Below, in pieces: positions 1 through 41,059 of a stretch of DNA of 41,613 nucleotides. Both the position numbers and the translations under genes were made by a program. Below the pieces are notes generated by a model. That model saw only the letters and a program-made list of their open reading frames with translations. It was not told where the DNA came from and did not search any database. The stretch covers positions 2,350,261 through 2,391,873 of the forward strand of contig NC_069010.1 in assembly GCF_001194135.2 (NCBI RefSeq), in the 5' to 3' direction. The DNA is from Octopus bimaculoides. Its lineage: Eukaryota. How positions within the stretch are numbered: the first letter of the stretch is position 1; every line of letters begins with the position of its first letter.

Positions 1-291
1 TATACGTTTCAGTTTCCATCTCTAAGCTTGGTGGGCCCAAGGCTATAGTAGAAGACACTTTGCCCAAGGTGTCATGCAGTTGGACTGAACCTAGAACCAT
101 GTGGTTGGAAGGCAAATTTCTTACCACACAGCCACGCCTGCGCATATATCATTCGTTTTGCACTTGTTTCAATCATTGGTCGGCCCGAGGCTATAGTAGA
201 AGACACTTGCCCAAGGTGCCGCGCAGTGGGACTGAACCCGGAACCATGTGGTTGGTAAGCAAGCTACTTACCACTCAGCCACTCATGCGCC
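1..291 (-). mobile_element. tRNA-derived SINE family A (CORE-like), two tandem 5' portions
   Basis: Reverse complement of the head ggcgcaggagtggctgtgtggtaag...ggttcagtcccactgcg and body gggcaagtgtcttctactatagcc. The same sequence recurs at about 1025-1365, 2120-2620, 16430-16610, 18055-18260, 25830-26141, 34382-34652, 34927-35305, 35480-35830 and 39870-40080. Confidence 0.85.
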
Positions 292-299
292 TATAAGTT

Positions 300-4626: not shown

Positions 4627-4786
4627 CCCTTTAAGTGTTCACATTATTCTGCCATAATTAATGCTTTTTTATCCACATTGTTTTGAACTAATCATGCATT
4701 ATCTTGTAGCTATGAGATTTTGATGAGGTAGCTGTTAATTTTTAAAATGTTATTGTAGGGTTGGTGTGAAAGACTAGATCTGGTCN
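4627..4786. mobile_element. piggyBac-like MITE, truncated by gap
   Basis: Starts TTAA-CCCTTT and is homologous to 7641-7861. Confidence 0.7.
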
Positions 4787-5502
4787 NNNNNNNNNNNNNN
4801 NNNNNNNNNNNNNNNNNNNNNNNNNNNNNNNNNNNNNNNNNNNNNNNNNNNNNNNNNNNNNNNNNNNNNNNNNNNNNNNNNNNNNNNNNNNNNNNNNNNN
4901 NNNNNNNNNNNNNNNNNNNNNNNNNNNNNNNNNNNNNNNNNNNNNNNNNNNNNNNNNNNNNNNNNNNNNNNNNNNNNNNNNNNNNNNNNNNNNNNNNNNN
5001 NNNNNNNNNNNNNNNNNNNNNNNNNNNNNNNNNNNNNNNNNNNNNNNNNNNNNNNNNNNNNNNNNNNNNNNNNNNNNNNNNNNNNNNNNNNNNNNNNNNN
5101 NNNNNNNNNNNNNNNNNNNNNNNNNNNNNNNNNNNNNNNNNNNNNNNNNNNNNNNNNNNNNNNNNNNNNNNNNNNNNNNNNNNNNNNNNNNNNNNNNNNN
5201 NNNNNNNNNNNNNNNNNNNNNNNNNNNNNNNNNNNNNNNNNNNNNNNNNNNNNNNNNNNNNNNNNNNNNNNNNNNNNNNNNNNNNNNNNNNNNNNNNNNN
5301 NNNNNNNNNNNNNNNNNNNNNNNNNNNNNNNNNNNNNNNNNNNNNNNNNNNNNNNNNNNNNNNNNNNNNNNNNNNNNNNNNNNNNNNNNNNNNNNNNNNN
5401 NNNNNNNNNNNNNNNNNNNNNNNNNNNNNNNNNNNNNNNNNNNNNNNNNNNNNNNNNNNNNNNNNNNNATAAGGGTAGAGAGGGAAGTGTTGTCTTCTAA
5501 CT

Positions 5503-10101: not shown

Positions 10102-13100
10102 ATGGAGAGTTTACTCCGTGCCGTACTGACCTCCCCTCCAGACCTTCCTTTGCCAACCAAAGTCGACAATGTCCAGCAGAATACATCCACTCGGGCCACC
10201 AGTCCATATTTACATGCGGCATTGACAACCACTCTTCACCATGACCCTCACATTGAACAAAGTCACGGTCATGGTGCCGCTGAGCAGGCCACAGTGTCAC
10301 CTACTGCTGTCGACAGCAGTGGTGAGGCTCTGGGAGAGCATGAATCAAAACAGAAGGCAGGGGAAGGGGTAAGGACAGTTGCAGTTTGCAACAACAGTGG
10401 CATTGACAGTAAGAAGCCATCATCTCTGATCTCAAACAGGCACAGTAAACTTTTGGAAGCTTTGACATCAGATTTCCGACTCTCCACCAGTCGCCTGCGA
10501 GCGGCCTTAACTACCCCATTGCTGTCACCTCTACAGTCGTCATTAATGACAACAGCACCTCCGGTGCCACAACCACCATTAGAGACTAATTCACTGGTTA
10601 GTTCAGCAGACCCTAACCCACCATCAAATGCTGCACCCTACAAAAGTAAGTTATTTTTGGCCCTTACATCCCCTCTGGAATACTGGGACAAAGACTTGGC
10701 TTGTTCAAAAGAACCAAATTCTGTCTCCGACTCAAACAAAACCCATTGCCCCGGAAAGACAAGTGATCGGACAGTTGCTACTGCCACCAAAGCAGTGGGG
10801 AAGACAATCAAGCAAGAAAATGCAGCAGAAAGACTTGATGCATCACCAGCAGAGATTGAACCTAAAAACACCACCACCACCACCACCACTGTAGTCACAG
10901 GGTGGCAGCAGTGTTACCAACATAGAAGTCCTGGTGATGCCATCAAATCAGAGCTTCCAGTACCTCCTGAGTGTTTATCATCCTCATTTCAACCACCAAG
11001 CAAAAATAATGCCACTCCATACCATTCTGAGTTGCACAACACTGTGTTCCATGAAAGTCCTGAATGCACTAAGAGTCGAAGTGCACTTGTTGACAGACTG
11101 CAAGCAGCTCCAGTGTGTTCTTTTGTAGATTCACACCGTGAAAGCAAGAAACGAGAAATGCAGTCATGTCCTTTAGGGAGCGGTAAACACTTTCAGTTTT
11201 CTCCTGAAGCTGCAAGTTTTGATCAGAAGATCAAGACAGAAAGCACCACATTTGGGATTGGTCAGTCTAGTCTTGAGCACAAGCAGAACCCAACTTGTGC
11301 TGTTAAATCCCTTCCCAATGTTACCCAAGTCAGTCATAAACACGATAGTGACTCAGCAGTTTGTGTCGACATCTCTGAAGGAAGACAACTTTGTAAGGAA
11401 GAATTTGATCCCCACAACACGAAGAACCTTGTCGGCATTGGAAATACGGAACAGAGTGGAAAGTCTACAGTTTGTGTTGCTGTGTCTGTAGAAAAACAGC
11501 TCAGTGAAGAGGAAGTTATTCCACATAATGAAAAGAACGTTGTTAAAATTGGCCCCAAGATGAAGCGTATGCACTTCCGAAAGAAACTGCTCACCCGATC
11601 AAAGAGTCCCTCAAGGCCGTCTGGCATTTCTGTTGCCAAAAAGCGCAAGTTCCTGGATCATTGCAAAAGCAGGCTTGAAAATTCCGACCCTACTTTTTCT
11701 ATGGATTCTTCATCATCACTTCTTGAACACTTGGTGTGTAAAAAGCAGAAGGTGGAAAATGTGACAAAGCAAAATCTAGAGGAAGATGAAGGATCTAATT
11801 CTAACTTTGACAATCAAATAATCACAGACAATTCTTCATGTGAGTCATTGGAAAATTCAGTCTCTGATTCTGTAAAGAATGATGACAATTACATTAATGG
11901 TGATGGGGTTTCATCTTGTTTGACATTACAGGAAAATCTCCCTGAAAACTTTAGCAAATGCCAAAGAGAATCTATATTGCAATCAACAATCAAGGGGCCC
12001 AAGTCAGATGTAAAACCCAGTTGTGACTCTAAATTAGGTTCGGCAAGGAACTCTTCCTCTTCAAGAACACTTTGGGAGAAGAATACGGGTTATCCTAATA
12101 ATAGTCCAGCTACAAAATCGCAGATACTTCGGGAAGCTTTGACTTCTGCACCAATATCTTTGCATAAACCAAGTTTAGGGTTGATGCCAGCAGTCCCTGA
12201 ATTCGAGAAGATGAATGGTATGACAACAGATTTGTGTGACTCTGTCACAAATAATCACTCAAGCAGCCAGGACCCATTGACCAAGGAGCAGGATCAGAAC
12301 AAACAGACTGATGCTTGTAAAACGCCAAATGCAACACTGTCAGCATCAGAAAAACCCTGTAAGCCAGCTGGCAACACAAAACACTCTTCACAACTCTTGT
12401 TAGCAGCTCTTACAGCTGCAGATGACTTGAGAAAAACACCAGTTTCAAAACCCATCACGAGACAGACAAATTCTGAAATACTGAGAGCGGCATTGGACAG
12501 TTCTGAAAGAGCTGATTCTTTAAACTATCACAGCAAGCATTCACAATTACTACGTGCAGCTCTCATTGCTGTCGACACTAATAAGGCTATTAAGGAGAAG
12601 ACGCATGAAATTGGCCCCAAAAACTCCAACTCACGCTTATTGCGTGCTGTGTTGACCGGCAAGTACAGTCCTGAAACAGACAGGTTTTGTCACTCAAAAA
12701 CCTCGTCAAGTCCCCCTTTACCTTCATCTCGGCATCTGTCTGTTGCTTCTATGCCTCTCACAGGAAACAAGAACACATCTGGAGTCAAGAATGTATCACA
12801 AGACACCACAAAATCGTCTGTCAACACTGGCAGCTCTCGGGCCAGTGGTCACTCCATATTACGAGCTGTTCTCACAGGTGCTCTTGACGTGCCCCAGCAA
12901 TCTGTAACAAACAGCTCCAAGGGCTCTGCACCACAAGCACGACGACAATCAAGGAGGAGGAGGAGGAGGAGTGAACTAGACCTAAAGCCAAACCACGGCG
13001 GATATTTCCGCAACAGTGACTACAACATGAGCCAAACAATGGAGCTGACTTCTGCCGCAAATGTTAACGACAATCCTCAAACAACAGACATCGCCATGAA

Positions 13101-14313
13101 AACTGAACAGCCAAAGGAATCAACCAATAATGAAGGCAATTGCGAAACCAAACAACTCCAAAATACTGAGAGCTGTGTTAGACAGCGTCAAAAGACAGGC
13201 AACGAATGCATCTACTGTGGTCGGGTGCACTCAAGCGATGACACCCTGTGGTTGTACACAAGTTTGTTTGCCAGCAAGAAACAACATCACTTCTGTCATG
13301 TGTGTCGTCAGACTTTTAGCATCACGTGCCTCTTTCTGCAGCACGTGGAGCAGCATCATGATGCTCAGACAAAGTATCGCTGCGAATTCTGTGGCCGCTA
13401 TTTCGTTCATGTTCTCTCGTACATCATGTGCCGGCTGTCACACATGGACGCACAGAAGGAGGAGGGCAAAGCCAGCAATGACAATGACAGACCATTGGAG
13501 TGCCAGGTAAAACACGACGACAATCTTGATGTCCAGAAGGGCAGCAAGGACAACAACAACAAGAGTAACAACAACAACAACAACAATGATGATGATAATA
13601 AAATTAACGGTTTTTATATTCCTGCCAATAAAACTAATTACAAAGATAATAATGATGATAATAACAAGAACACTGAAGATGGTGTCAGTGTAGATGGATG
13701 TTGTCGGAGGGAATCTGGAGATTGTAAGCTCTGCAAAAATGGACTCTTCCAGCACCGTATAAACTGCTGCCTTCATGAGACCAATGCTACTGCTGCTGCT
13801 GCTGTTGATGAAGATGACTGTACAAGAGCGGAAGTCTCTAGTGAAGAGTGCACAGGAAACTGCAGATGTCATTGTGAACTACACCATCTCTGTGACCAAA
13901 TACACGACATGCCCACCACCACTACCAAAGACAACCATGTCCACAACAGTAACAGCAGCAACAATAACAACTGCTGCAATGATGAGAAAACGTTTCAGTG
14001 TATGGCATGCACGAAATGGTTTTTGTCCAGGAAGGAACTGTGCACTCACAAGCAACTGCACTTAGACATTCCAGCTGGTGAGCACCGTCAACATCGGGAG
14101 AAGAAGGGCACATCGGATTTCCAAGGCGACCCAGATGCACACCAGTGTTCAGCACCTGTTTTGACAAATATGCATCTTGGCTGCAACTCTTGTGGAGCGC
14201 TGCACCAAAGCAGGCAAAAATACAGGACACCTTGTTTGTGGAATAACTGCTCTGGAGACACGGCTGTACAACTGCATTCGGACAGTCGCTGCCTGCAATT
14301 GGTCAAAGACTAA
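10102..14313 (+). CDS. Intronless C2H2 zinc-finger protein, 1403 aa, with a long low-complexity N-terminal region carrying repeated L-x-x-[A/V]-L motifs
   Basis: A 4.2-kb uninterrupted ORF in AT-rich repeat DNA. Canonical C-x2-C-x12-H-x3-H fingers lie at 13294-13356 and 13999-14061, a C-x2-C-x12-C-x3-H finger at 13381-13443, and degenerate fingers at about 13207 and 14180. Basic NLS-like runs are AKKRK and RRQSRRRRRRS. An in-frame TAG at 10090-10092 just upstream could also be a splice acceptor. Confidence 0.85.
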   Translation: MESLLRAVLTSPPDLPLPTKVDNVQQNTSTRATSPYLHAALTTTLHHDPHIEQSHGHGAAEQATVSPTAVDSSGEALGEHESKQKAGEGVRTVAVCNNSGIDSKKPSSLISNRHSKLLEALTSDFRLSTSRLRAALTTPLLSPLQSSLMTTAPPVPQPPLETNSLVSSADPNPPSNAAPYKSKLFLALTSPLEYWDKDLACSKEPNSVSDSNKTHCPGKTSDRTVATATKAVGKTIKQENAAERLDASPAEIEPKNTTTTTTTVVTGWQQCYQHRSPGDAIKSELPVPPECLSSSFQPPSKNNATPYHSELHNTVFHESPECTKSRSALVDRLQAAPVCSFVDSHRESKKREMQSCPLGSGKHFQFSPEAASFDQKIKTESTTFGIGQSSLEHKQNPTCAVKSLPNVTQVSHKHDSDSAVCVDISEGRQLCKEEFDPHNTKNLVGIGNTEQSGKSTVCVAVSVEKQLSEEEVIPHNEKNVVKIGPKMKRMHFRKKLLTRSKSPSRPSGISVAKKRKFLDHCKSRLENSDPTFSMDSSSSLLEHLVCKKQKVENVTKQNLEEDEGSNSNFDNQIITDNSSCESLENSVSDSVKNDDNYINGDGVSSCLTLQENLPENFSKCQRESILQSTIKGPKSDVKPSCDSKLGSARNSSSSRTLWEKNTGYPNNSPATKSQILREALTSAPISLHKPSLGLMPAVPEFEKMNGMTTDLCDSVTNNHSSSQDPLTKEQDQNKQTDACKTPNATLSASEKPCKPAGNTKHSSQLLLAALTAADDLRKTPVSKPITRQTNSEILRAALDSSERADSLNYHSKHSQLLRAALIAVDTNKAIKEKTHEIGPKNSNSRLLRAVLTGKYSPETDRFCHSKTSSSPPLPSSRHLSVASMPLTGNKNTSGVKNVSQDTTKSSVNTGSSRASGHSILRAVLTGALDVPQQSVTNSSKGSAPQARRQSRRRRRRSELDLKPNHGGYFRNSDYNMSQTMELTSAANVNDNPQTTDIAMKTEQPKESTNNEGNCETKQLQNTESCVRQRQKTGNECIYCGRVHSSDDTLWLYTSLFASKKQHHFCHVCRQTFSITCLFLQHVEQHHDAQTKYRCEFCGRYFVHVLSYIMCRLSHMDAQKEEGKASNDNDRPLECQVKHDDNLDVQKGSKDNNNKSNNNNNNNDDDNKINGFYIPANKTNYKDNNDDNNKNTEDGVSVDGCCRRESGDCKLCKNGLFQHRINCCLHETNATAAAAVDEDDCTRAEVSSEECTGNCRCHCELHHLCDQIHDMPTTTTKDNHVHNSNSSNNNNCCNDEKTFQCMACTKWFLSRKELCTHKQLHLDIPAGEHRQHREKKGTSDFQGDPDAHQCSAPVLTNMHLGCNSCGALHQSRQKYRTPCLWNNCSGDTAVQLHSDSRCLQLVKD

Positions 14314-17221
14314 GAGAGTGACCAGTGTATCCATGCTACACATGCACCCATAAACACATGCACACATAAACACACAAATACCTGTACCCTGGCTCCTACA
14401 CACACTGCAGTGGTTTACATGCATACTGCAGCAAGCTAGCAGAATTGTTAGCACACCAGGCAAAATGCTAAGTGGCGTTTCGTCCATCTTTACATTCTGG
14501 GTTCAAATTCCGCCGAGGTGGACTTTGCCTTTCATCCTTCCAGGGCCAATAAAATAATAAGTACCAGTTGGACACTGGAGTGAATGTAATCAACTTACCT
14601 GCTCCCCTGGAATTGCTGGCCTTGTGCTAAAATTTGAAACTAACATTACATATACATACATATATTACAGTGCTAATTACACACACACACACACACACAC
14701 CACAATACAGGCATATGCTGCAATGTTATTGCTCACTTACGCACACACCACAATACATGCGTGTACTGCAGTTATATCACACACGCACACATACACTGTT
14801 GTGTTAACACAGAGTTACACTAACCCACTTTTATGGACACTAATGCCACATTTGAATAACTGGTCCCTGAGGTATGGAGAGGCAGGAGGGCCCAGAGCTG
14901 CAATGTTTTTGGACACAGTGGTCTGTTGTACTCGGGTTTGAAATGATTATAAACAACATTGTCACCAACACACATACATACCTATATATATATANNNNNN
15001 NNNNNNNNNNNNNNNNNNNNNNNNNNNNNNNNNNNNNNNNNNNNNNNNNNNNNNNNNNNNNNNNNNNNNNNNNNNNNNNNNNNNNNNNNNNNNNNNNNNN
15101 NNNNNNNNNNNNNNNNNNNNNNNNNNNNNNNNNNNNNNNNNNNNNNNNNNNNNNNNNNNNNNNNNNNNNNNNNNNNNNNNNNNNNNNNNNNNNNNNNNNN
15201 NNNNNNNNNNNNNNNNNNNNNNNNNNNNNNNNNNNNNNNNNNNNNNNNNNNNNNNNNNNNNNNNNNNNNNNNNNNNNNNNNNNNNNNNNNNNNNNNNNNN
15301 NNNNNNNNNNNNNNNNNNNNNNNNNNNNNNNNNNNNNNNNNNNNNNNNNNNNNNNNNNNNNNNNNNNNNNNNNNNNNNNNNNNNNNNNNNNNNNNNNNNN
15401 NNNNNNNNNNNNNNNNNNNNNNTATATATATGATGCTTTGCTATATCTCTGTCGGCTCTTTATTTTCTGAGTTGTTCAAATCTTGCCCAGGTCCACCTGT
15501 GTGGTAGGCTTGATCCATTGCTCATTATAACAACGCCACCACCATCATCACCATCACTACCACCACCACCACCATCTGACACCCTCGGTTGGGTGCCTCT
15601 TGTAGAGTCTACTCTGTTGTAAGCATTTGTGCCAGGGCCCCAGTTTGAGGATACCCTCCCCCCAACCACCCACTTTGCAGACACTGTAAAGGATTATGGG
15701 ATAGGGTACTACCTTCCCTTCTGACTAAATGATTGAAAAAAATATATAAATACATATCTATATTTATAGACATATATATATATATATATATATATACACA
15801 GTCATACATACATATATACACATACACACACATATATATACTTTAAACATGTACACATCTTTCTTTCATACACATTCATACACTTTCTGTATATATCTTC
15901 ATCAGTATCATAACCAGCATCATCATCATCATTAACTTCAATGCTGCCATGGGTTGGACAGGTCTATAAATGAACAACTACGGGTTTTGGTCCTCCCCCA
16001 TTTTCTTCCATTTAAAAATATATTTATTTTCTTTTTTTTTTAATTTATTTTCTTTTTGGTCTTAATCAGGAGAGGGGGATGGTAGTACCCAGGATTTCTC
16101 CTCCCACCAAGACTCCCTCTTCAGTCTCGAATCCTGGGCCCTAAACACTTGCAACAACACCCCAGGGTCACTATCATTGGTGTCCATGGTGACACCAGTG
16201 TTGTTAAATTAGATAACATATTAAGTTTAATCATCTGAAAACCAGAGCTGGTTTCCCTTCCTGTTGACCAACAGGTTTCCATACAGTTTCCTTCTGTCAA
16301 CCCTTAATTCCACTCAGTAAGGTCTTTAGTCAACCTGAAGTGCATGATTTAAATAACAAAAAAAAACCACACTTGCCTGGGATGGAACCTGAAACTGCAT
16401 AGTTGTGAGGCTGTTAGCCTGACTTCTTAACTACGGCGCCATGTATGTCTATGTGTAACTATATGTGTATGCACTTTGCCACCTCTAATGTTCTAGGTTC
16501 AATCCCACTGCATGGCATCTTGGAAAAGTGTCTTCTACTGTAGCCTCAGACTGACCAAAGCCTTGTGAATGGATTTCGTAGAAGGAAACTGATAGAAGCC
16601 TTTTATATAGATTTTTTCATACTGAACTACTTGGCAAAATTGTTAATTATTAATTTTATTACTAATTGACGATTCCCTGCCCTATATCTGTATATTTATA
16701 TTGATGCCTCTAATTGGATGGTTAAACTGTAACCCTTTTATACGGGACTTTTTATGCGGGACTATTTGTGGCGCACATGGAATAGATTCTTTGGAGTGAA
16801 GTGTTTGAACTTACTAGCCGATAAATTTTGTAAGTGCCTTCCTCATGTGTTTTTGATGTCGCATGGTCAAAATTCCCATGAGTTATATAGACACTTTCAA
16901 ATTTATTCGAATATTGTGCTGAAGATCGGAATAGAGTNNNNNNNNNNNNNNNNNNNNNNNNNNNNNNNNNNNNNNNNNNNNNNNNNNNNNNNNNNNNNNN
17001 NNNNNNNNNNNNNNNNNNNNNNNNNNNNNNNNNNNNNNNNNNNNNNNNNNNNNNNNNNNNNNNNNNNNNNNNNNNNNNNNNNNNNNNNNNNNNNNNNNNN
17101 NNNNNNNNNNNNNNNNNNNNNNNNNNNNNNNNNNNNNNNNNNNNNNNNNNNNNNNNNNNNNNNNNNNNNNNNNNNNNNNNNNNNNNNNNNNNNNNNNNNN
17201 NNNNNNNNNNNNNNNNNNNNN

Positions 17222-18030: not shown

Positions 18031-18329
18031 AAAGGGGTCTTTATGTATGCATGTATGTACCCTTTTACTCTTTACTCTTTTACTTGTTTCAGTCATTTGA
18101 CTGCGGCCATGCTGGAGCACCGCCTTTAGTTGAGCAAATCGACCCCGGGACTTATTCTTTGTAAGCCTAGTACTTATTCTATCGGTGTCTTTTGCCGAAC
18201 CGCTAAGTGACAGGAACATAAACACACCAGCATCGGTTGTCAAGCAATGCTGGGGGGGGGGGGGGNNNNNNNNNNNNNNNNNNNNNNNNNNNNNNNNNNN
18301 NNNNNNNNNNNNNNNNNNNNNNNTTTTTT

Positions 18330-24847: not shown

Positions 24848-25829
24848 TATGGCACAATACAGAAAGTGTAGAGAGTCTTACAGTCACCTCCTAGAACCAG
24901 CTCCCAAGTTTTTATTCCAGCATTTTCCATTGTTACTGAATCTTTCACAACTGCTAGCCTTTTCTTGTTTTGCTGTCTTTTGTTCTCGGAACAATGTGGA
25001 AACTATCAGAGATTTCTATTCATATCCAAGTACCCTCTTCCCCAAGACTGCTGTCAGGTTTTGCCATTATTCACCATGTCTTTCACTACTGCCTGCCATA
25101 TCTTCTTCGAACAACATTCCTTTTTGAGTCCATCTTCAAGTCTACCAGAACCTCCTGACCACACCCAGTACCAAATTTCATCCCAGACTTTCCCATCCCT
25201 CACAAAATCTTTATTTTTGTCAGCCTTTTGAGTTTTGGTATTCATTACTCCTTTGCCTCTGCAAAGACAATCAGGTTCCTCAAGTCATTTCTCTTAAGGG
25301 CCAGATCCCAGTTTCATTCCCATTTTTGTCATCGCTCAGATGAACTTACAGTACTAGTCATTCCTACTTTTGAAGTCATTGTTTCTTGAGATGCAATAAA
25401 GACTATCAGACACTTCCAACTTTTGACATCCTTTCTTCAAGTATTTCTTTGAGTTTACCAGAGCCTTTAAATCATCTCCAAGTGCCAGATGCCAAATGTC
25501 ATCCCAGCTTTTACTTTCACTCACAAAATCTTTCACTACTGCCAACCATTTCTTCTTTGGATGTTCTTACTTCTTAGGACCCTGTGGAGAGTAGCAGAAC
25601 CTATCAGCCCTCTCTATCACTTGCCAGGTCACTAGCCTCATCCCAGCTTTTGCCGTCGCTCACAAAATCTTTCACTATCTCTACTCCAAGTCATTTCTTT
25701 TCTGGACATCCTTTCTCCTTGTGACCTTGTGGAAACTACCAAAGCCTTGCAGCCACCTCTATCAAGTGCTAGATCCAAAGCTCAATTCCACTTCTGTTAT
25801 CACTCTAAAAATCTTTCTCTACTACTCTA
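24848..25829 (-). repeat. LINE(RTE)-tail-derived tandem array, right part (about 7 degenerate units of about 130-150 bp)
   Basis: Minus-strand units translate as GCPKKKWLAVVKDFVS-x-SKSWD-x-IW-x-LAL, KDFVRDGKVWDEIW and LDLALDRGGCKALVVST. Confidence 0.6.
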
Positions 25830-26141
25830 GGCGTAGGAGTGGGTGTGTGGTAAGTAGCTTGCTTACCAACCACATGGTCCCGGGTTCAGTCCCACTGCGT
25901 GGCATCTTGGGCAAGTGTCTTCTACTATAGCCTCGGGCCGACCAAAGCCTTGTGAGTGGATTTGGTAGACGGAAACTGAAAGAAGCCCGTCATATATATG
26001 TATGTGTTTGTTCCCCCAACATCGCTTGACAACCGATGCTGGTGTGTTTATGTCCCCGTAACTTAGCGGTTTGGCAAAAAGAGACCGATAGAATAAGTAC
26101 TAGGCTTCTAAAGAATAAGTCCTGGGGTCGATTTGCTCGAC
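25830..26141 (+). mobile_element. SINE family A, young near-full copy running into a gap
   Basis: tRNA-like A/B boxes (gtgtggtaag, ggttcagtccc) and intact CpGs. Confidence 0.9.
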
Positions 26142-26815
26142 NNNNNNNNNNNNNNNNNNNNNNNNNNNNNNNNNNNNNNNNNNNNNNNNNNNNNNNNNNN
26201 NNNNNNNNNNNNNNNNNNNNNNNNNNNNNNNNNNNNNNNNNNNNNNNNNNNNNNNNNNNNNNNNNNNNNNNNNNNNNNNNNNNNNNNNNNNNNNNNNNNN
26301 NNNNNNNNNNNNNNNNNNNNNNNNNNNNNNNNNNNNNNNNNNNNNNNNNNNNNNNNNNNNNNNNNNNNNNNNNNNNNNNNNNNNNNNNNNNNNNNNNNNN
26401 NNNNNNNNNNNNNNNNNNNNNNNNNNNNNNNNNNNNNNNNNNNNNNNNNNNNNNNNNNNNNNNNNNNNNNNNNNNNNNNNNNNNNNNNNNNNNNNNNNNN
26501 NNNNNNNNNNNNNNNNNNNNNNNNNNNNNNNNNNNNNNNNNNNNNNNNNNNNNNNNNNNNNNNNNNNNNNNNNNNNNNNNNNNNNNNNNNNNNNNNNNNN
26601 NNNNNNNNNNNNNNNNNNNNNNNNNNNNNNNNNNNNNNNNNNNNNNNNNNNNNNNNNNNNNNNNNNNNNNNNNNNNNNNNNNNNNNNNNNNNNNNNNNNN
26701 NNNNNNNNNNNNNNNNNNNNNNNNNNNNNNNNNNNNNNNNNNNNNNNNNNNNNNNNNNNNNNNNNNNNNNNNNNNNNNNNNNNNNNNNNNNNNNNNNNNN
26801 NNNNNNNNNNNNNNN

Positions 26816-27100: not shown

Positions 27101-27543
27101 TGACTTATCATGTATGAAAGCCCTTATCTTCATAGTATTCCTACATTGGTGACACAGTCTCTGTACAAAATGAGACAAAATTTGGCATTTAGGATTTTTC
27201 ACACAGATGTATACTGGTTACAGCTGAGAGAGTGAATAGGGAATGCTATTTCAATGTGAGTATACATGGACATAAATTAATTCCAGCACATAAGGTCGAG
27301 AGTTCAATTCCTGGCAACGCACTGTGTCCTTGAGCAAGACACTTTATTTCACATTGCTCCAGTCCACTCGACCGGCAAAAACGAGTAGTATCTGCATTTC
27401 AACGGGGCCAGCCTTGTCACATTCTGTGTCATGCTGAATTTCCCTGAGAAATATGTTAAGGGTACAATTTTTCTGTGGAGCACTCAGCCTCTTTAACATT
27501 AATTTCACGAGGGAGCTATTCTGTTGATCATATNNNNNNNNNN

Positions 27544-27583
<40 letters not shown>

Positions 27584-27593
27584 CATACATACA

Positions 27594-27629
<36 letters not shown>

Positions 27630-27656
27630 TAATGTATGTATGTTTATATATATGTG

Positions 27657-27687
<31 letters not shown>

Positions 27688-27708
27688 ATACATACATACA
27701 TATATATA

Positions 27709-27893
27709 TGGTGGTGGTGGTGGTGGTGGTTTCAGGAGTGATGGTAATAGTTGTGATGGTGGTAGTGACGGTAATGGTTGTTGACATTGGTGGTGGTTGC
27801 GGTAGTAGTGATCGTGGTGATGGTGGTGTTTCAAGAGGTGGTGGTGTTGGCACTATTGGTGCTGATTGTGGTGGAGATAGCAGGAGTAATGGC

Positions 27894-27948
<55 letters not shown>

Positions 27949-28365
27949 ATGGTGGTGGTGGTGGTGGTGGTGATAACAGTAGCAGTGGTGGTGATGGTGG
28001 TAGCAGTGGTGGTGGTAATAGCAGTGGTGGTGGTGGTGGTGATGGTGATAGCAGTAGCAGTAGTGATGGTGGTAGCAGCGGTGGTGGTGGTGGTGATGGT
28101 GATGGCAGTAGCAGTGGTGGCGGTGGTGGTGGTGATAGCAGTAGTGGTGGTGGTGGTGATGGTGATAGCAGTAGCAGTGGTGGTGTTAGTGGTGGTGGTG
28201 ATAGCAGTAGCAGTAGCGGTGGTGTTGGTAGAGGCAAAAGTGACAGTGGTGGTGGTGGCGGTGGCGGTGGTAGTGGTGGTTTTGTTAGGAGAGGCTGTGG
28301 TGGTGGCAGTAGTGGTTGTGGTGGTAGTTGTTACCATCACAGTAACAGTAACAACAACAAGCAGC
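27709..28365. repeat. (GGT)/(AGT)/(AGC) trinucleotide mosaic
   Basis: Seen directly. It yields poly-G/S, poly-V, poly-P and poly-T ORFs in several frames. Confidence 0.9.
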
Positions 28366-28439
28366 AGATCTTTCCAAAGATGACTCACTTAGCAACAAGT
28401 CAGCTGATGCTGATAGCCATGTTTTTCTTCCCCCTATTT

Positions 28440-29905
28440 TGCATATGTGTGTGTGTGTGTGTATGTTTGTATATATGTGTGTATCGATGTTTGTGTATAT
28501 GTGTGTGTGCGTGTATGTTTGTGTATATGCATGTGTGCTTGAATTTATATGCATAAAAGTGTGTGTGTGTCTATATGTGTGCATATGACTGTATGTGTAT
28601 GACCGTAAGCATATGATTGTGTGTGTGTGTGTGTGTGAGTGTCTGTGTGTGCATGTGTGTATATATGTATGCGTGTTTGTATTTACGTGTATGACAGTAT
28701 GTGTGTGTAATACTGTGTGTATGCATGTTTGTGTATATGCGTATGTGTATGACTGTGTGTGTGAGTGAGAGTGTCTATGTGTATGCGTGTTTGTATTTAC
28801 GTGTATGACAGTATGTGTGTGTGTGTGTGTGTGTGTATTACTGTGTGTATGCATGTTTGTGTATATGCGTATATGTATGTGTATGCATATTTGTATTTAT
28901 GTGTATGATTCTGTGTGCGTGTGTGAGTGAGAGTGTCTATGTGTGTGTGTGTATATGTGTATGCGTGTATACATGTATGCGTGTTTGTATTTATGTGTAT
29001 GACAGTGTGTGTATGCATATTTGTGTATAAATGTGTATGCATATATGTATGCGTGTTTGTGTTTATGTGTATGACAGTAAGTGTGTGTGAATGAGTGTGT
29101 GTATGCATGTTTGCGTATAAGTGTGTATGCATTTGTATTTATGCGTATGACAGTGTGTGTGTGTGTGTGTGTGATATGACTGTTTGGGTATGGCTGTCGG
29201 TGTATGACTGTGTGTATATGACCTGTATATATGTATGTATACATATACACATGTGACTTGTGTATATGATCAGTGTATATGTATGTATATGTGTATGCAC
29301 GTTTGCATTTATGTGTATGACAGTGTGTATATATCTATGTGCATGTGTACAATTGTGTAGATGTGTGTGTGTTTGTATTTATGTGTGCAACTGTGTGTGT
29401 ATATTTGTGTGTGGTTGCATCTGAGTTTGTGCATGAGTTTGTTTGTATGCATGTCTCTGTATATGTGCATGCATATGTATATACATGTTTGTATTTGTGT
29501 ATGACTGTATGCATATATATATACATATGTGTGTGTGTGTGTATGTATGTAATTGTATGCGTATGTATATTTGTATGTATGTGTATGTCTGTACATGTAT
29601 ATATGTGAGTGTGATCGTGTGTATATGTATGCATGTGTATATGTGTGTGTGTAAGTGTGTGTATGTCTGTGCTTGTATGAGTATGTATGTATGTGTATGT
29701 ATAACAGTGTATATATCTGTGTATGACTGTGAATTTATGTGTGTATGTAGGTGTATGGGTATAACTGTCTATTCTGTGTATGTGCATGCATCTATTTGTG
29801 TATGTGTATATGCATGTATGTTTCTGTATGACAGATTGTATATGCAGCTGCATATATGTGTATAACAGTGCATATACTTCTATATATGTGTATAACATAT
29901 ATATA
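28440..29905. repeat. Degenerate (TG)/(TATG) satellite with higher-order units
   Basis: Recurrent gtgtatgcgtgtttgtatttacgtgtatgacag unit. Confidence 0.85.
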
Positions 29906-31067
29906 TAGGCGCAGGAGTGGCTGTGTGGTAAGTAGCTTGCATACCANNNNNNNNNNNNNNNNNNNNNNNNNNNNNNNNNNNNNNNNNNNNNNNNNNNNNN
30001 NNNNNNNNNNNNNNNNNNNNNNNNNNNNNNNNNNNNNNNNNNNNNNCTATGACCGCGAGTCCGCTGTCCTAACCACTGGGCCATTGCGCCTCCACCCACA
30101 ATGTTATACACGAATATTAAATCTACTCCAGTATTTCATTGGTAGTTTATTTCACCGACCGTCCCACAATTGACTTCAGCAAGATTTGAACACAGAATGT
30201 AAAGAGCCGGTACAAACATTTTTGTCCAACTTTCTACTGATCCACTACCTCAAAAATTTTTGATAACAGTTAACAAGTTGAAAGGAAGAAATAAGCGAAA
30301 TTAAGAGGCGAAAATTGTTAGATGAAAAACGAAGTTGTTAGTTGAGGTACACCCGAAATACGAACTTCTATTGTCTTTCAATTGAATTCTATTTCTATTG
30401 ATGATGCTTTATTGGAATATTAAATCGATTTCAGTATTTGATTGGTACTTTATTTCATCGAACCCCAGAAGGATAGAAGACAAAGTCGACCTCGGCGATA
30501 TTTGTACACAGAACGAAAGAAAAACCAGACCAAATTTTGAAAGGATTTTTTCTTTATTTTTTTCCAACAAAATTTAAAACCTGAAATTATTTACGTGAAA
30601 AACGAAACAATTCGTTTAGGTGCATATGAAAAATGAAATCATATTAGCGCCCGAAAGACGAACCTATCTTAGTCTTCCAGCATTATTCCATTCTCATCTA
30701 GGATGTTTTATAGGAATATTAAAATCTATTCTAATACTTGACTAGTACTTTATTTTATCACCCCCGGAAAGATGAAAGGCAAAGTTAATCTCGGCAGGAT
30801 TTGAACTCGGAACTAGAATTAAAAGCAGGTTCGATCGGTGTCCGATCGGTGTTTGATCCTTGAATGCTGGTTAGATTCTGAAGAGGGGACTTTTTATTTA
30901 TAATTATTTCACAGCGAGACTTTGTATATGAGATTTAGTGTATCTGTTATACATACATATATATATATTAGATACTAAATATACGTAATGTAGAGAACTC
31001 TTCTGTGTGGGACGAATAGATTACAACAGCAGCTGTTTTGTGCCAGAGCAGAGGAAAAGGCTTCATT

Positions 31068-33670: not shown

Positions 33671-36600
33671 CTTTTCTCAGTCTCTTCGTTGACTGATCTC
33701 CGTCGAGCCAAGACGTCCAACAGAGCTCTCTCACATGTCAGCACCAGAGCTTCACAAATAACCACGGAAATCATTCAGGAGGCGTCTCAGTAACCNNNNN
33801 NNNNNNNNNNNNNNNNNNNNNNNNNNNNNNNNNNNNNNNNNNNNNNNNNNNNNNNNNNNNNNNNNNNNNNNNNNNNNNNNNNNNNNNNNNNNNNNNNNNN
33901 NNNNNNNNNNNNNNNNNNNNNNNNNNNNNNNNNNNNNNNNNNNNNNNNNNNNNNNNNNNNNNNNNNNNNNNNNNNNNNNNNNNNNNNNNNNNNNNNNNNN
34001 NNNNNNNNNNNNNNNNNNNNNNNNNNNNNNNNNNNNNNNNNNNNNNNNNNNNNNNNNNNNNNNNNNNNNNNNNNNNNNNNNNNNNNNNNNNNNNNNNNNN
34101 NNNNNNNNNNNNNNNNNNNNNNNNNNNNNNNNNNNNNNNNNNNNNNNNNNNNNNNNNNNNNNNNNNNNNNNNNNNNNNNNNNNNNNNNNNNNNNNNNNNN
34201 NNNNNNNNNNNNNNNNNNNNNNNNNNNNNNNNNNNNNNNNNNNNNNNNNNNNNNNNNNNNNNNNNNNNNNNNNNNNNNNNNNNNNNNNNNNNNNNNNNNN
34301 NNNNNNNNNNNNNNNNNNNNNNNNNNNNNNNNNNNNNNNNNNNNNNNNNNNNNNNNNNNNNNNNNNNNNNNNNNNNNNNNNTTTGGTAGACGGAAACTGA
34401 AAGAAGCCCGTCGTATATATGTATATATATATATATGTGTATGTTTGTGTGTTTGTGTTTGTCCCCCCACCATTGCTTGGCAACCGATGCTGGTGTGTTT
34501 ACGTCCCCGTAACTTAGCGGTTCGGCAAAAAGAGACCGATAGAATAAGTACTAGGCTTACAAAGAATAAGTCCCGGGGTCGATTTGCTCGACTAAAGGCG
34601 GTGCTCCAGCATGGCCGCAGTCAAATGACTGAAACAAGTAAAAGAGTAAAGAGTAAAACAAAAAAGAAACCGATAATTGAGTTTAATTACTCTTCTTTCT
34701 GTAATTATGGTGGGTAACGTTTGGCGACTTGCTTCGTTCACTATCAAACATTTCTATAGTTGACTCCTTCACCTTGCACAAGTCTGTGTGCATGTATATT
34801 TGTATGCAAGCATAATTTATTAATTATTGTACTATTCTGATTCCTCACAACTGTCTGATGAAGTTACATGAAACTTTGTGTAATAGTTTGTGAAGTCTTT
34901 TCAGCCTCAATAAAATAGCATGTATAGGCGCAAGAGTGGCTGTGTGGTAAGAAGCTTGCTTCCCAACCACACGATTCAGGGTTCGGACCCACTGCATGGC
35001 AACTTGACCAAGTGTCTTCTACTATAAGCCGTGGCCAACCAAAGCATTGTGAATGGATTTGGTAGACAGAAACTTAAAGAAGCCCATCATATATGTGTGT
35101 GTGTGTTTTTGTGTCTGTATTTGGCCATCCTGTCCCACCACTTGACAACCGATGTGTGTTTACATCCTCATAACTTAGTGGTTCGGCAAAAGAGACCAAT
35201 AGAATAAGTACCGTGCTTTAAAATATAAGTATTGGAGTTGATGCATATGATTAAAATTTCTTCAAGGCAGTGCCTCGGCATGGCCATGTCTAATGACTAA
35301 AATATGTGTGTGTGTGTGTGTGTGTGTTGGTATCTCCTTATTTTGACAACGTGACAGTTGTAAATGTGTTCCACCATCATACAGGCAATGTATGATGTTT
35401 CCAATCTTCCATGTAAACTTTAAGCCATGGGGAAATGTTACCTTACTTGGAAACAAGTAAGGGTTGGCAACAGGAAAGGCACATGGTTCCTGGTTCAGTC
35501 CCACTCCATGGCACTTGGGTGTCTTCTACTATAGACTCAGGCCATCCAAAGACATATGTGTGGATTTGGGAGACGAAAACTGAAAGAAGCCTATCATGTG
35601 TATGCATATGTCTGTCTGTGTGTCAGTGTTTGTCCCACACCACTGCTTGACAACTAGTATTGATATGTCCCCATAACGTAGCAGTTCAGCAAAAGAGACC
35701 GATAGAATAAGTATCAGGTTTTACAAAAAATAAGTACTAAGAATCAATTTGTTTGAGTAAAATTCTTCAAGGCAGTGCCCCAGCTTGGCCCCAGTCTAAT
35801 GACAGAAACAAGTAAAGAGTAAAAGATAATCACATACTCAAAATCTCAAAGCTACAGGACAAAATGCAAGATGAATTCAAAACAAGGCTAGATCCAGCCT
35901 CTCACACCTACCCTATAATATCATTCTAAAAATAAACAATCACGTCATTGAAATCTCAAAGCTTTCTATGAGATAATGCAAAATTAATTTAAAACAATGT
36001 GAATAAATAAGGATTACATCTGGCAGAGTAATCTGAATGCTAAAGGGTTAATTAAGGTTAATGGATTCAAATTCTACCAACGTCGATTTTACTTTTGTCC
36101 TTTTGGAGTCAACGAAATAAGTACCGATTATGCACTGAGGTCAATGTAATCGACTTATCCCCTCCCCCCAAATTTCAGGCCTTGTTTATATAGTAGAAAG
36201 GATTATTATTATTATTATTATCATTATTATGGTGGCGAGCTGGCAGAACTGTTAGCTTTCCTGGCAAAGGATCATTAGCACGCCAAGCAAAATGCTTAGC
36301 AGCACTTTGTCCATCCTTATGTTCTGAATTCAAATTCTGCCAAGGTCAGCTTTGCCTTTCGTCCTTTCAGAGTCGATGTACCAGTTATGCACATAAGTAC
36401 CAGTTATGCACTAAGGTCAATGCAGTTGACTTATCCCCTCCCCCCAAATTTCAGGCCTTGTACCTGTAACAGAAAGGATTATTTTTGAGGTGGTAGTGAG
36501 GACATGCTATGTGGCTGTTCTGTAGTGTAGCAGCGATGGTGGTGACGGTGGTGGTGGTGGTGGTAACAGTGTTGCTTGATAGTGACAATGTGTGGTTGAG

Positions 36601-40506: not shown

Positions 40507-40598
40507 GTAAGTCTAGTTAAGATCTGGTTTATCAGGTTTCAGATATTTAGTATGAGTTTTGAAGGAGGTGTAGGGACACAGTCTTGGCTTTGAGAAAG

Positions 40599-40778
40599 GT
40601 ACTCTACCCAAGGAAGGTACCACACCCAAGCAACATACCTTGCCCAAGGAAGGTACCTCATCTAAGCAGCGTACCTTATCTAAGTAGTGTACCTCACCCG
40701 AGCAGCGTACCTCATCTGGGTAGCGTACCTCATCCGAGCAGCATACCTCACCCGAGCAACATTCCTCGCCCAAGGAAG
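40599..40778. repeat. 18-bp minisatellite, 10 units (gtacctcacccgagcagc / gtactctacccaaggaag variants)
   Basis: Exact 18-nt register with no indels. Confidence 0.9.
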
Positions 40779-41059
40779 GTATCTTACTGTGTGGTAACCT
40801 TCTTGGGTGGGTATGTTTTACTTTAGTCCCAGGACAACTAAGAACTAGTCAGTGAATTTAAAAGATGGAAACTATGAAGAAGCTCATAGTATCATCATTG
40901 TAGTTTCAACATCCACATTTCCATGCTTTGCATGGGTTGGACAGAATTTGTTGAGGCAGATTTTGTTGTGGCTGAATGCCCTTCAAGTTGCTGACCCCTG
41001 CCTGTTTTGAAGCAAGATAATATTTCTCTTTGGCTGGACATATTTTCTTGGAAGAATGG

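What the first reader, a model, noticed from the sequence alone, without database searches (positions are those of the whole stretch)
10108..12879. Zinc-finger protein with 11 repeats of an NR-box-like L-x-x-[A/V]-L-T helix in two clusters
Seen in the translation: SL-LRAVLT (10108), SPY-LHAALT (10201), SK-LLEALT (10444), SR-LRAALT (10489), SK-LFLALT (10645), SQI-LREALT (12118), SQL-LLAALT (12388), SEI-LRAALD (12472), SQL-LRAALI (12541), SRL-LRAVLT (12631) and SI-LRAVLT (12853). The codons differ between copies and the spacers are unrelated, so this is not a DNA tandem repeat and suggests protein-level selection. Established: LxxLL NR boxes with upstream Ser/basic residues and a following Thr (e.g. 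KLLQLLT in GRIP1) dock on nuclear receptors. NRIP1/RIP140 has nine of them in a single coding exon. Sin3-interaction helices use LLxAA. Inference: a multivalent co-regulator scaffold fused to C2H2 fingers, using a systematic Ala/Val variant at position +4, whose partner is unknown. This architecture differs from the long tandem-finger genes typical of the cephalopod C2H2 expansion. This is my best candidate for an undescribed system here.
Basis: partly seen in the sequence, partly recalled or inferred. Interest (0 to 1): 0.75.

Follow-up and report, generated by a model that had tools for sequence, protein, structure and literature searches.

The report
Conserved helix-motif array in octopus zinc-finger protein
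An intronless, cephalopod-only gene encodes a mostly disordered nuclear zinc-finger protein with eleven strongly conserved copies of a short helix motif (S-x-Φ-L-R-A-[A/V]-L-T) that looks like, but is not, a nuclear-receptor LxxLL box, so it is probably a multivalent docking protein whose partner is unknown.

Summary
Window 10102-14313 (+) is one 1403-aa ORF with 11 in-frame copies of L-x-x-[A/V]-L-[T/D/I] at exactly the stated coordinates. Shuffles expect 0.15 copies, and 0 of 20,000 reach the observed count. The copies use different codons and are not a DNA repeat.

Only two orthologues were found: O. sinensis LOC118768461 ("uncharacterized", 89% aa) and a 33%-identical protein (P0003) from an unidentified distant cephalopod. 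Ten of the 11 copies sit at orthologous positions in P0003. Motif columns are 82% identical and spacers 21%. In the first 1030 residues the motifs are the only conserved islands. Between the two octopuses the motif codons carry 9 synonymous and 0 non-synonymous changes (spacer dN/dS 0.32).

AlphaFold2 predicts disorder, with short helices on 10 of the 11 copies.

The motif is not a canonical NR box. Position +4 is never Leu in the 33 in-frame instances across the three orthologues, there is no LxxLL anywhere, and there is no sign of kinship with NRIP1. It also fails the Mad-type Sin3 SID pattern. It does share NR-box flank classes, differs from the Ftz "LRALLT" box only at +4, and weakly resembles SMRT/NCoR ID2.

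Best reading: a DNA-tethered multivalent docking scaffold. A nuclear-receptor partner is plausible but untested. A twelfth copy lies out of frame at 13157-13183.

The parts
10102..14313 (+). Single-exon coding sequence, 1403 aa, from ATG to stop. It is the orthologue of O. sinensis LOC118768461.
   Evidence: There is an in-frame stop 5 codons upstream. Start (MESLLRAVLTS) and end (..KD*) are conserved in P0003. Overall dN/dS is 0.31.
10108..10131 (+). Motif copy 1, S-L-LRAVLT (aa 3-10), at the extreme N-terminus.
   Evidence: Identical in all three orthologues; helix in AF2.
10201..10227 (+). Motif copy 2, SPY-LHAALT (aa 34-42).
   Evidence: LHAALT is kept in P0003. This is the only copy not predicted helical.
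10444..10467 (+). Motif copy 3, SK-LLEALT (aa 115-122).
   Evidence: RHSKLLEAL is identical in P0003.
10489..10512 (+). Motif copy 4, SR-LRAALT (aa 130-137). Octopus-specific copy with no counterpart in P0003.
10645..10668 (+). Motif copy 5, SK-LFLALT (aa 182-189).
   Evidence: P0003 has KSRLFMALTSP.
12118..12144 (+). Motif copy 6, SQI-LREALT (aa 673-681).
12388..12414 (+). Motif copy 7, SQL-LLAALT (aa 763-771).
12472..12498 (+). Motif copy 8, SEI-LRAALD (aa 791-799).
12541..12567 (+). Motif copy 9, SQL-LRAALI (aa 814-822), followed by the conserved AVDTNKA.
12631..12657 (+). Motif copy 10, SRL-LRAVLT (aa 844-852), followed by the conserved GKY.
   Evidence: Its resemblance to SMRT ID2 IIRKALMGKY is weak.
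12853..12876 (+). Motif copy 11, SI-LRAVLT (aa 918-925).
13157..13183 (+). Twelfth copy, S-K-I-LRAVLD, readable only in the +1 frame of the ORF. Probably a relic or out-of-frame duplicate of copy 8.
   Evidence: 72% DNA identity over 43 nt to copy 8 (family D3).
11557..11649 (+). Basic stretch KMKRMHFRKK...AKKRK (aa 486-516), a likely nuclear localisation signal.
   Evidence: This is an inference from composition; P0003 has KRKK and KKKK in the same spacer.
13207..13443 (+). Conserved zinc-finger module (aa 1036-1114): a degenerate finger, a C2H2 finger and a C2CH finger.
   Evidence: dN/dS 0.014. 60% identity to P0003. The module is shared with cephalopod paralogues P0004-P0007.
13541..13985 (+). 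N/D-rich low-complexity region with decayed fingers, where P0003 has canonical C2H2 fingers.
   Evidence: D1. dN/dS is 0.48.
13993..14061 (+). Last canonical C2H2 finger (aa 1298-1320, FQCMACTKWFLSRKELCTHKQLH).

Best explanation
Shown: the ORF is a real, selected, single-exon gene found only in cephalopods among the libraries searched. Its product is about 1000 residues of disordered, fast-evolving chain followed by a small, highly constrained C2H2/C2CH zinc-finger module. Embedded in the disordered part are 11 ancient copies of a two-turn amphipathic helix, each individually conserved, with consensus [S]-x-(L/I/K/R)-L-R-A-(A/V)-L-T-(small).

Inferred: each copy is a short linear docking motif. 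It would present L+1, A/V+4 and L+5 (plus the residue at -1) to a hydrophobic groove on a partner protein. The fingers would tether the array to DNA, so that one molecule can hold many partner molecules, or rebind one avidly.

Most likely partner class: the co-regulator (AF-2) groove of nuclear-receptor ligand-binding domains. That would make the protein a RIP140-like multivalent nuclear-receptor co-regulator that uses a non-canonical 'LxxAL' box. The obligatory small residue at +4 would then set a selectivity or affinity different from LxxLL boxes.
For: Reality and selection. There are 11 copies against 0.15 expected. Motif codons between the two octopuses show 9 synonymous and 0 non-synonymous changes, where about 13 non-synonymous would be expected at the spacer rate. 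Ten of 11 copies are positionally orthologous in the 33%-identical P0003, each keeping its own variant (LHAAL, LLEAL, LF[LM]AL, LLLAAL). Motif columns are 82% identical against 21% for spacers, and the motifs are the only islands with at least 6 of 9 identical residues in aa 1-1030. One copy was gained or lost in each lineage, which is typical linear-motif turnover.

Disorder with helices. AF2 mean pLDDT is 34 and 46, with helices on 10 of 11 copies.

Nuclear, DNA-tethered context. The finger module has dN/dS 0.014. There are basic clusters and an excess of psi-K-x-E sites.

Nuclear-receptor likeness. The geometry is Φ(-1), L+1, x, x, Φ+4, L+5. Residues at -1 and -2 reproduce NR-box classes I (basic at -1), II (Pro at -2) and III (Ser at -2) as described in PMC2233640. 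The core differs only at +4 from the Ftz 'LRALLT' box that recruits Ftz-F1 (PMC3203194). SMRT/NCoR ID2 (..IIRKALMGKY / ..IIRKALMGSF; PMC7031403) shows that a bona fide NR-binding helix can carry Φ-x-x-A-L, and it is the best-scoring of six known NR peptides (P about 0.03). BCL11A is a precedent for a C2H2 protein that docks on nuclear receptors through a non-LxxLL helix, and LxxML and FxxLL are accepted variants (PMC3834829).
Against: Position +4 is A or V in all 33 in-frame instances and never L, I, M or F, and there is no LxxLL in any orthologue. An NR-box array would be expected to drift through LxxLL at least sometimes. LxxLL-to-LxxAA is the standard inactivating mutation (PMC2233640), although that mutation also removes L+5. 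Canonical NR-box peptides (TRAP220) score at chance on the motif profile, and SMRT ID2 scores only -1.2 bits against 10-30 bits for true copies. No homology to NRIP1 or any named co-regulator was detected. No binding or complex modelling could be run. Only three orthologues are available, and two of them are close to each other.
Confidence: 0.35

Rival explanations
1. The architecture is the same (a multivalent docking helix on a DNA-tethered disordered scaffold), but the partner is another helix-binding domain of the transcription machinery. Candidates are Sin3 PAH domains, CBP/p300 KIX or TAZ, a TAFH/NHR1 domain, a Mediator subunit, or a cephalopod-specific protein.
For: All the evidence for a conserved linear-motif array applies equally. 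The strict need for small residues at +3/+4 (A at +3 in 16 of 22 copies, A/V at +4 in 22 of 22) points to a tight pocket, as with the Ala-Ala pair of Mad-type Sin3-interaction helices (own knowledge). The absence of any LxxLL argues for a specificity distinct from the AF-2 groove. psi-K-x-E sites are common in repressors.
Against: The Mad-type SID consensus (Φ-Φ-x-A-A-x-x-Φ, own knowledge) needs a bulky hydrophobic three residues after the Ala pair. Here +7/+8 are S, A, G, T or P, and the invariant L+5 is unexplained by that consensus. KIX/TAZ-type Φ-x-x-Φ-Φ motifs want a bulky residue at +4. A profile search of PDB chains found only chance matches inside folded domains (Hcp3, RTEL1).
Confidence: 0.3
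2. The copies are regulatory or targeting elements rather than docking sites for transcription partners. They could be phospho-regulated degrons, nuclear export signals or chaperone sites. The flanking Ser (-2/-3) and T-S/T-P (+6 to +8) would act as kinase sites.
For: Ser at -3 or -2 is found in most copies, often after a basic or His residue (RHS, KHS). Thr at +6 is found in 18 of 22 copies, and it is followed by S/T-P in cluster 1 (LTSP, LTTP).
Against: Eleven copies of a degron or NES would be unusual. The pattern lacks the four-hydrophobic spacing of classical NES, except at copy 11 (own knowledge applied). Invariance is centred on L+1, +4 and L+5, not on the Ser or Thr.
Confidence: 0.1
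3. The helices associate with each other or with the protein's own finger module. This would be intramolecular packing, oligomerisation or condensate formation, with no external partner.
For: There are many copies of one amphipathic helix in a disordered chain. Copies 3 and 4, and copies 8 and 9, are close enough that AF2 predicts longer helices across them.
Against: AF2 does not pack the helices against each other or against the finger (pTM 0.19 and 0.14, pLDDT below 50 nearly everywhere). A two-turn helix with an Ala-rich face is a weak self-association unit. Spacer lengths vary from 15 to about 490 residues and are not conserved.
Confidence: 0.1
4. Not a functional feature: the copies are a chance pattern, a low-complexity artefact, a recent DNA repeat or a non-coding ORF.
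For: Pfam finds nothing in the octopus protein. The window is repeat-rich and has assembly gaps.
Against: No shuffle out of 20,000 reaches the count. There is no DNA tandem repeat. dN/dS is 0.31 overall, 0.014 in the fingers and 0 in the motifs. The copies are conserved in a 33%-identical orthologue that is also a single ORF.
Confidence: 0.01

Closest known systems
NRIP1/RIP140 (multi-NR-box co-regulator)
   Same: It is a long, mostly disordered nuclear protein encoded by a single coding exon. Ser, basic or hydrophobic residues flank the motif at -2/-1, as in NR-box classes (PMC2233640).
   Different: There is no LxxLL at all, because +4 is always A or V. There are no PxDLS CtBP sites. No sequence homology was detected. 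It carries a C-terminal zinc-finger module, which RIP140 lacks.
Ftz 'LRALLT' box binding the nuclear receptor Ftz-F1 (NR5A3)
   Same: The core hexamer is LRA-x-LT. Octopus copies read LRAALT or LRAVLT and Ftz reads LRALLT (PMC3203194). Both lie in a DNA-binding transcription factor.
   Different: Ftz has a single copy with Leu at +4. Here there are 11 copies with Ala or Val at +4. There is no homeodomain and no homology.
SMRT/NCoR ID2 (CoRNR box 2), ..LE[AD]IIRKALMG[KY/SF]..
   Same: The pattern Φ-Φ-R-x-A-L-x-G is shared. Copy 10, LLRAVLTGKY, compares with SMRT IIRKALMGKY (PMC7031403). It is the best of six known NR peptides on the motif profile (P about 0.03). It shows that Ala is tolerated at the position equivalent to +4 in an NR-binding helix.
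   Different: The N-terminal extra turn with its Leu (L-x-x-x-I-x-x-x-L) that defines corepressor boxes is missing; the equivalent position (-4) is polar. The score is far below that of true copies (-1.2 against 10-30 bits).
BCL11A RID1/RID2 (F/Y-S-x-x-L-x-x-L/Y) and related zinc-finger co-regulators
   Same: It is a C2H2 zinc-finger regulator that docks on nuclear-receptor LBDs through a conserved non-LxxLL amphipathic helix with an upstream Ser (PMC3834829).
   Different: The spacing and anchor residues differ, with no aromatic residue before the Ser. BCL11A has two copies, not eleven. There is no homology.
Mad-type Sin3-interaction domain (LLxAA helix)
   Same: Several copies read L-L-x-A-A, and there is a strict need for small residues in the middle of the helix (the SID consensus is own knowledge).
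   Different: The downstream bulky hydrophobic of the SID is absent, and the invariant L+5 has no counterpart. Copies such as LLEALT and LFLALT break the LLxAA register.
Cephalopod C2H2 zinc-finger paralogues (e.g. O. bimaculoides 'zinc finger protein 227-like' XP_052834098.1, Sepia pharaonis CAE1319087.1)
   Same: They share the distinctive module CxxCG[KR]xH...(F)xCxxCxxxFSxxCLFxxH...Y[RQ]CE[FV]CG.
   Different: None of the paralogues carries a single copy of the motif. They have many more canonical fingers.

Membership tests
LxxLL nuclear-receptor box (NR box) | Core L-x-x-L-L, with Leu at +1, +4 and +5 | tested here: not met
   No L..LL occurs anywhere in P0001, P0002 or P0003. Position +4 is Ala 15 times and Val 7 times in 22 copies.
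LxxLL nuclear-receptor box (NR box) | Short amphipathic alpha-helix in a disordered region | tested here: met
   AF2 predicts helices on 10 of 11 copies within chains of mean pLDDT 34 and 46.
LxxLL nuclear-receptor box (NR box) | Flank classes: hydrophobic or basic residue at -1; Ser/Thr, Pro or basic residue at -2 (PMC2233640) | tested here: met
   At -1: L/I 15, K/R 5, Y/H 2. At -2: S 9, Q 7, P 2, E 2, R 2. The class definitions were read.
LxxLL nuclear-receptor box (NR box) | Binds the AF-2 groove of a nuclear-receptor LBD | not testable with these tools
   Complex modelling accepts only window or hit sequences, and no binding assay is available.
NRIP1/RIP140 family | Sequence homology to NRIP1 | tested here: not met
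   Pfam gives no family at E<=1. The exhaustive HMMER search found only two orthologues plus generic or cephalopod zinc-finger proteins.
NRIP1/RIP140 family | CtBP-binding PxDLS-type motifs | tested here: not met
   The regex P[LVIM][DN]L[STK] finds none in the three orthologues.
CoRNR box (NCoR/SMRT corepressor motif) | Three-turn helix L-x-x-x-I/L-x-x-x-I/L, or core [IL]-x-x-[IV]-I | tested here: not met
   The position four residues before L+1 is polar (S, K, N or H). The last two core residues are [AV]-L, not [IV]-I. SMRT and NCoR ID2 score -1.2 bits on the motif profile.
Mad-type Sin3-interaction domain | Φ-Φ-x-A-A-x-x-Φ amphipathic helix (consensus from own knowledge) | tested here: not met
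   Positions +7/+8 are small or polar in nearly all copies. Copies 3, 5 and 6 lack the A-A pair.
C2H2 zinc-finger proteins | C-x2-4-C-x12-H-x3-5-H fingers and a Pfam zf-C2H2 match | tested here: met
   Octopus has two canonical patterns plus a conserved C2CH finger, but is below the Pfam threshold. Orthologue P0003 has six canonical patterns, and zf-C2H2 scores 29.1 bits against a cut-off of 25.2.
Neuropeptide/propeptide-type repeated-peptide precursors | Signal peptide and dibasic cleavage sites flanking each conserved copy | tested here: not met
   The N-terminus is MESLLRAVLTSPPD, which is not a hydrophobic signal. The flanks are Ser, Thr or Pro, not KR or RR. Zinc fingers and basic clusters point to the nucleus.

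The most novel reading that the evidence does not exclude
The array defines a new class of co-regulator docking motif, an 'LxxAL box' with consensus S-x-Φ-L-R-A-[A/V]-L-T. The motif arose in cephalopods and is read by a groove that excludes Leu at +4. That groove could belong to a subset of cephalopod nuclear receptors (for example NR5A/Ftz-F1-like or NR2E/F-like) or to a partner not yet known to bind such helices. This would give cephalopods a lineage-specific, DNA-tethered, highly multivalent hub. The out-of-frame twelfth copy might also be used by an alternative transcript.
Probability: 0.25. Interest if true: 0.7.

Novelty: new variant of a known kind. Interest (0 to 1): 0.5.

Why it matters
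Short linear motifs are rarely found from sequence alone with this much support. Here there are eleven ancient copies, each individually conserved, and they are the only conserved islands in about 1000 residues of otherwise diverged disordered chain. If the partner is a nuclear receptor, this would be an invertebrate, lineage-specific analogue of RIP140 built on a zinc-finger protein. It would also be a natural experiment on what position +4 of an NR box does. If the partner is something else, it defines a new helix-groove recognition code. In either case it gives a concrete, testable handle (a 9-residue peptide and its L+1/L+5 and A+4L mutants) on a cephalopod-specific transcription regulator from the expanded C2H2 family, whose members are almost all functionally uncharacterised.

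Tried and rejected
1. The search for homologous proteins was run with the whole protein, with the three-orthologue alignment and with the cluster-2-plus-finger alignment. It returned only the window protein and O. sinensis, or nothing. The word filter appears to be swamped, and all three searches are now used.

The single job was therefore run with aa 1-1130.

3. Metagenome scans, one by protein pattern and one by back-translated NSRLLRAVLTGKY, found no relatives.

4. An exact look-up of the window protein found nothing on record, so there is no transcript evidence.

5. A profile of the 20 motif contexts against PDB chains gave only chance matches inside folded domains (Hcp3, the RTEL1 harmonin-like domain, PA4511).

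6. A literature search for LXXAL, LRAAL, LLRAAL, LRAVL and LXXVL found nothing relevant.

7. These readings were considered and rejected:
- eh1/Groucho motif: no Phe.
- Paxillin LD motif: wrong spacing.
- WDR5 WIN motif, cyclin RxL and SxIP: wrong residues.
- Classical NES: spacing fits only at copy 11.
- Neuropeptide precursor: no signal peptide and no dibasic sites.
These rejections come from own knowledge of the consensus patterns applied to the table.

Full report
**1. The observation**

Window 10102-14313 (+) is one uninterrupted 1403-aa ORF that starts at an ATG. An in-frame stop lies five codons upstream. A regex scan finds L-x-x-[A/V]-L-[T/D/I] at aa 5, 37, 117, 132, 184, 676, 766, 794, 817, 847 and 920.

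In 20,000 shuffles of the protein the pattern occurs 0.15 times on average and never more than 3 times. The observed count is 12 overlapping matches.

The copies use different codons. Tandem Repeats Finder sees only short trinucleotide runs in the ORF. A direct-repeat search links only copies 3 and 6 at the DNA level, over 21 nt.

**2. What the gene is**

Pfam gives no hit for the octopus protein, even at E<=1. The indexed protein search returned only the window protein itself and an 88-89% identical O. sinensis protein, annotated "uncharacterized protein LOC118768461". That protein lies in a syntenic region about 90% identical in DNA.

An exhaustive HMMER search with aa 1-1130 against 1.84 billion cluster representatives found one further orthologue, P0003 (E = 4e-49). 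P0003 is 1171 aa and comes from an ENA assembly, contig ctg71386l. There, too, it is a single ORF. It is 33% identical overall, and only the densest motif stretch and the finger module still align at the DNA level. I infer that it comes from a distant cephalopod; its species is unknown.

All other hits match only the finger region. The best of them (P0004-P0007) are cephalopod zinc-finger proteins, for example O. bimaculoides "zinc finger protein 227-like" and a Sepia pharaonis protein. They share a distinctive module, CxxCG[KR]xH...CxxCxxxFSxxCLFxxH...Y[RQ]CE[FV]CG. None of the paralogues contains the motif. The weaker hits are generic fingers, which I judged PRDM-like on reading the sequences.

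The gene thus belongs to a cephalopod C2H2 lineage and is itself known only from cephalopods. Metagenome scans added nothing.

**3. Selection**

Between the two octopuses the CDS is 93% identical in DNA, and dN/dS is 0.31. The 110 codons covering the eleven copies (-3 to +6) carry 9 synonymous and 0 non-synonymous changes. At the spacer rate about 13 non-synonymous changes would be expected. The finger module, aa 1036-1116, has dN/dS 0.014.

Against P0003, ten of the eleven copies lie at orthologous positions. Each keeps its own peculiarity (LHAALT, LLEAL, LF[LM]ALT, LLLAALT, and so on). Motif columns (-1 to +6) are 82% identical and all other columns of aa 1-1030 are 21% identical. A sliding window (at least 6 of 9 identical) picks out the ten shared copies, and nothing else, in the first 1030 residues.

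Each lineage has one private copy. Octopus has aa 132. P0003 has aa 471, where octopus now reads SSCLTLQEN. The caveat is that only three orthologues exist, and two of them are close to each other.

**4. Anatomy of the motif**

These counts come from the 22 copies of octopus and P0003:

| Position | Residues (count of 22) |
|---|---|
| -3 | S 10, H 4 |
| -2 | S 9, Q 7, P 2 |
| -1 | L/I 15, K/R 5, Y/H 2 |
| +1 | L 22 |
| +2 | R 14, L 4, H 2, F 2 |
| +3 | A 16, E 3 |
| +4 | A 15, V 7 |
| +5 | L 22 |
| +6 | T 18 |
| +7 | S, A, G or T |

AlphaFold2 on aa 661-1123 and on aa 1-210, using the three-sequence alignments, predicts disorder. Mean pLDDT is 34 and 46, and pTM is 0.19 and 0.14. Short helices fall on copies 1 and 3-11; only copy 2 is not helical. 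The helices do not pack on each other or on the finger.

The chain is about 66% disorder-promoting residues. It has basic clusters (KKRK, RRRRRR) and 4-5 psi-K-x-E sites where 1.1 are expected. This fits a nuclear regulator. Nuclear localisation and SUMO modification are inferences.

**5. Mechanism**

Shown: an array of short helices under purifying selection in a disordered chain, attached to a constrained finger module.

Inferred: each helix is a docking motif that offers the face formed by -1, +1, +4 and +5 to a hydrophobic groove. The array gives multivalency or avidity, and the fingers tether it to DNA.

I rank the nuclear-receptor AF-2 groove first as the partner, for four reasons:
- The geometry is that of an NR box.
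- The residues at -1 and -2 reproduce NR-box classes I, II and III (PMC2233640).
- The hexamer differs only at +4 from the Ftz "LRALLT" box that recruits Ftz-F1 (PMC3203194).
- Bona fide NR-binding helices can be non-canonical. Examples are BCL11A F/YSxxLxxL/Y in a C2H2 protein, and the LxxML and FxxLL variants (PMC3834829). Another is SMRT/NCoR ID2..IIRKALMG(KY).., whose last two turns resemble copy 10, LLRAVLTGKY (PMC7031403).

From structural work I recall but did not check here, L+1 and L+5 are the buried anchors of NR boxes and +4 sits on the rim. An Ala or Val at +4 could therefore weaken or retune binding rather than abolish it.

**6. Why this is not membership**

- No LxxLL exists in any of the three proteins, and +4 is never L, I, M or F. 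This systematic exclusion argues for a specificity different from canonical NR boxes.
- A position-weight profile of the copies gives true copies 10-30 bits in leave-one-out scoring. It gives SMRT and NCoR ID2 -1.2 bits (P about 0.03 against random 22-mers). TRAP220 LxxLL peptides score at chance.
- The extra N-terminal turn of CoRNR boxes is absent, because position -4 is polar.
- The Mad-type Sin3 SID pattern fails. There is no bulky residue after the Ala pair, L+5 is unexplained, and three copies lack A-A (the consensus is from own knowledge).
- There is no PxDLS motif.
- A motif-profile search of PDB sequences gave only chance matches inside folded domains.
- A literature search for LxxAL-type motifs gave nothing.

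The partner is therefore open. I put about 0.85 on "conserved multivalent docking motif". Within that, I put about 0.35 on nuclear receptors and about 0.3 on another transcription-machinery groove.

**7. Zinc fingers**

The octopus protein keeps these elements:
- a degenerate first finger (CIYCGRVH...);
- a C2H2 finger at aa 1065;
- a C2CH finger at aa 1094-1114;
- one further C2H2 finger at aa 1300.

P0003 has six canonical patterns, and its zf-C2H2 score is above the Pfam cut-off. Where P0003 has fingers at aa 988-1091, octopus has an N/D-rich low-complexity stretch and decayed fingers, with dN/dS 0.48.

**8. A twelfth, out-of-frame copy**

A six-frame scan of the whole 41.6-kb window with L[RLHEKQ][AEL][AV]L[TDISN] finds ten of the in-frame copies and only one other match. 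That match is KPNNSKILRAVLDS in the +1 frame at 13157-13183, inside the same ORF and just upstream of the fingers.

O. sinensis has it too, as KPSNSKMLRAVLDS. The two substitutions inside it are conservative (I to M) or silent (R to R) in the +1 frame, but both change the residue in the main frame. With only two changes this is not decisive.

Its DNA is 72% identical over 43 nt to copy 8, at a spacing of 685 nt, which is 1 modulo 3 (family D3). P0003 has no counterpart in any frame.

The most likely reading is a relic: either a copy knocked out of frame, or a small duplication of copy 8 that landed out of frame. Use by an alternative transcript cannot be excluded without RNA data.

**9. Verdict**

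Its interpretation is partly supported. A selected, multivalent, helix-type linear-motif array on a zinc-finger protein is well supported. "NR-box-like" is a resemblance, not membership, and the partner is unknown.

The gene exists in databases only as "uncharacterized", and the motif appears undescribed. I rate it a new variant of a known kind (the multi-motif co-regulator scaffold) and of moderate interest.

Noticed in passing
window 13143-13185 (motif residues 13157-13183), +1 frame of the ORF; L001 about 13024-13066: A twelfth motif copy (NSKILRAVLDS) is readable only in the +1 frame. It is the only other match to the motif in all six frames of the window, it is shared with O. sinensis, and it is 72% DNA-identical to copy 8. 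It is either a relic of a frameshifted or duplicated copy, or part of an alternative transcript.
   Followed up: partly
window 13541-13985: An N/D-rich low-complexity stretch (AAC/GAT runs) and decayed fingers sit where the distant orthologue P0003 has canonical C2H2 fingers (aa 988-1091). The octopus lineage appears to have lost part of its DNA-binding array (dN/dS 0.48).
   Followed up: partly
window 12634-12666 (copy 10 plus GKY): LLRAVLTGKY is identical in P0003 and resembles the end of the human SMRT ID2 corepressor peptide, IIRKALMGKY. By profile score the resemblance is weak (-1.2 bits).
   Followed up: yes
ORF aa 236, 281, 377, 999 (window about 10807, 10942, 11230, 13096): There are four psi-K-x-E (SUMO-consensus-like) sites in the spacers, against 1.1 expected (P about 0.025). 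P0003 has five (P about 0.005), at non-orthologous positions.
   Followed up: partly
window 176-295, 971-1175, 2122-2504, 16441-16645, 18063-18257, 25828-26141, 34382-34658, 34925-35129: These are multiple copies, in both orientations, of a 120-300-nt interspersed repeat (up to 98% identical between copies). The repeat is also present many times in the O. sinensis locus and is probably a SINE-like element.
   Followed up: no
window 27530-29950: A large block of microsatellite and low-complexity DNA: TA/CATA runs, then GGT/GGC/AGC-type triplets, then TG-rich repeats. GC skew reaches +0.6. The long 'ORFs' it produces in several frames are artefacts.
   Followed up: no
window 40581-40784: A tandem repeat with an 18-nt period (about 11 units; GTACCTCAYCYRAGCAGC-like).
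   Followed up: no
window 4786-5468, 14995-15422, 26142-26815, 33796-34381 and seven shorter runs: There are eleven assembly gaps (3166 N in total), so the window comes from a draft assembly. The gap at 14995 lies about 680 nt downstream of the stop codon, which may hide part of the 3' UTR.
   Followed up: no
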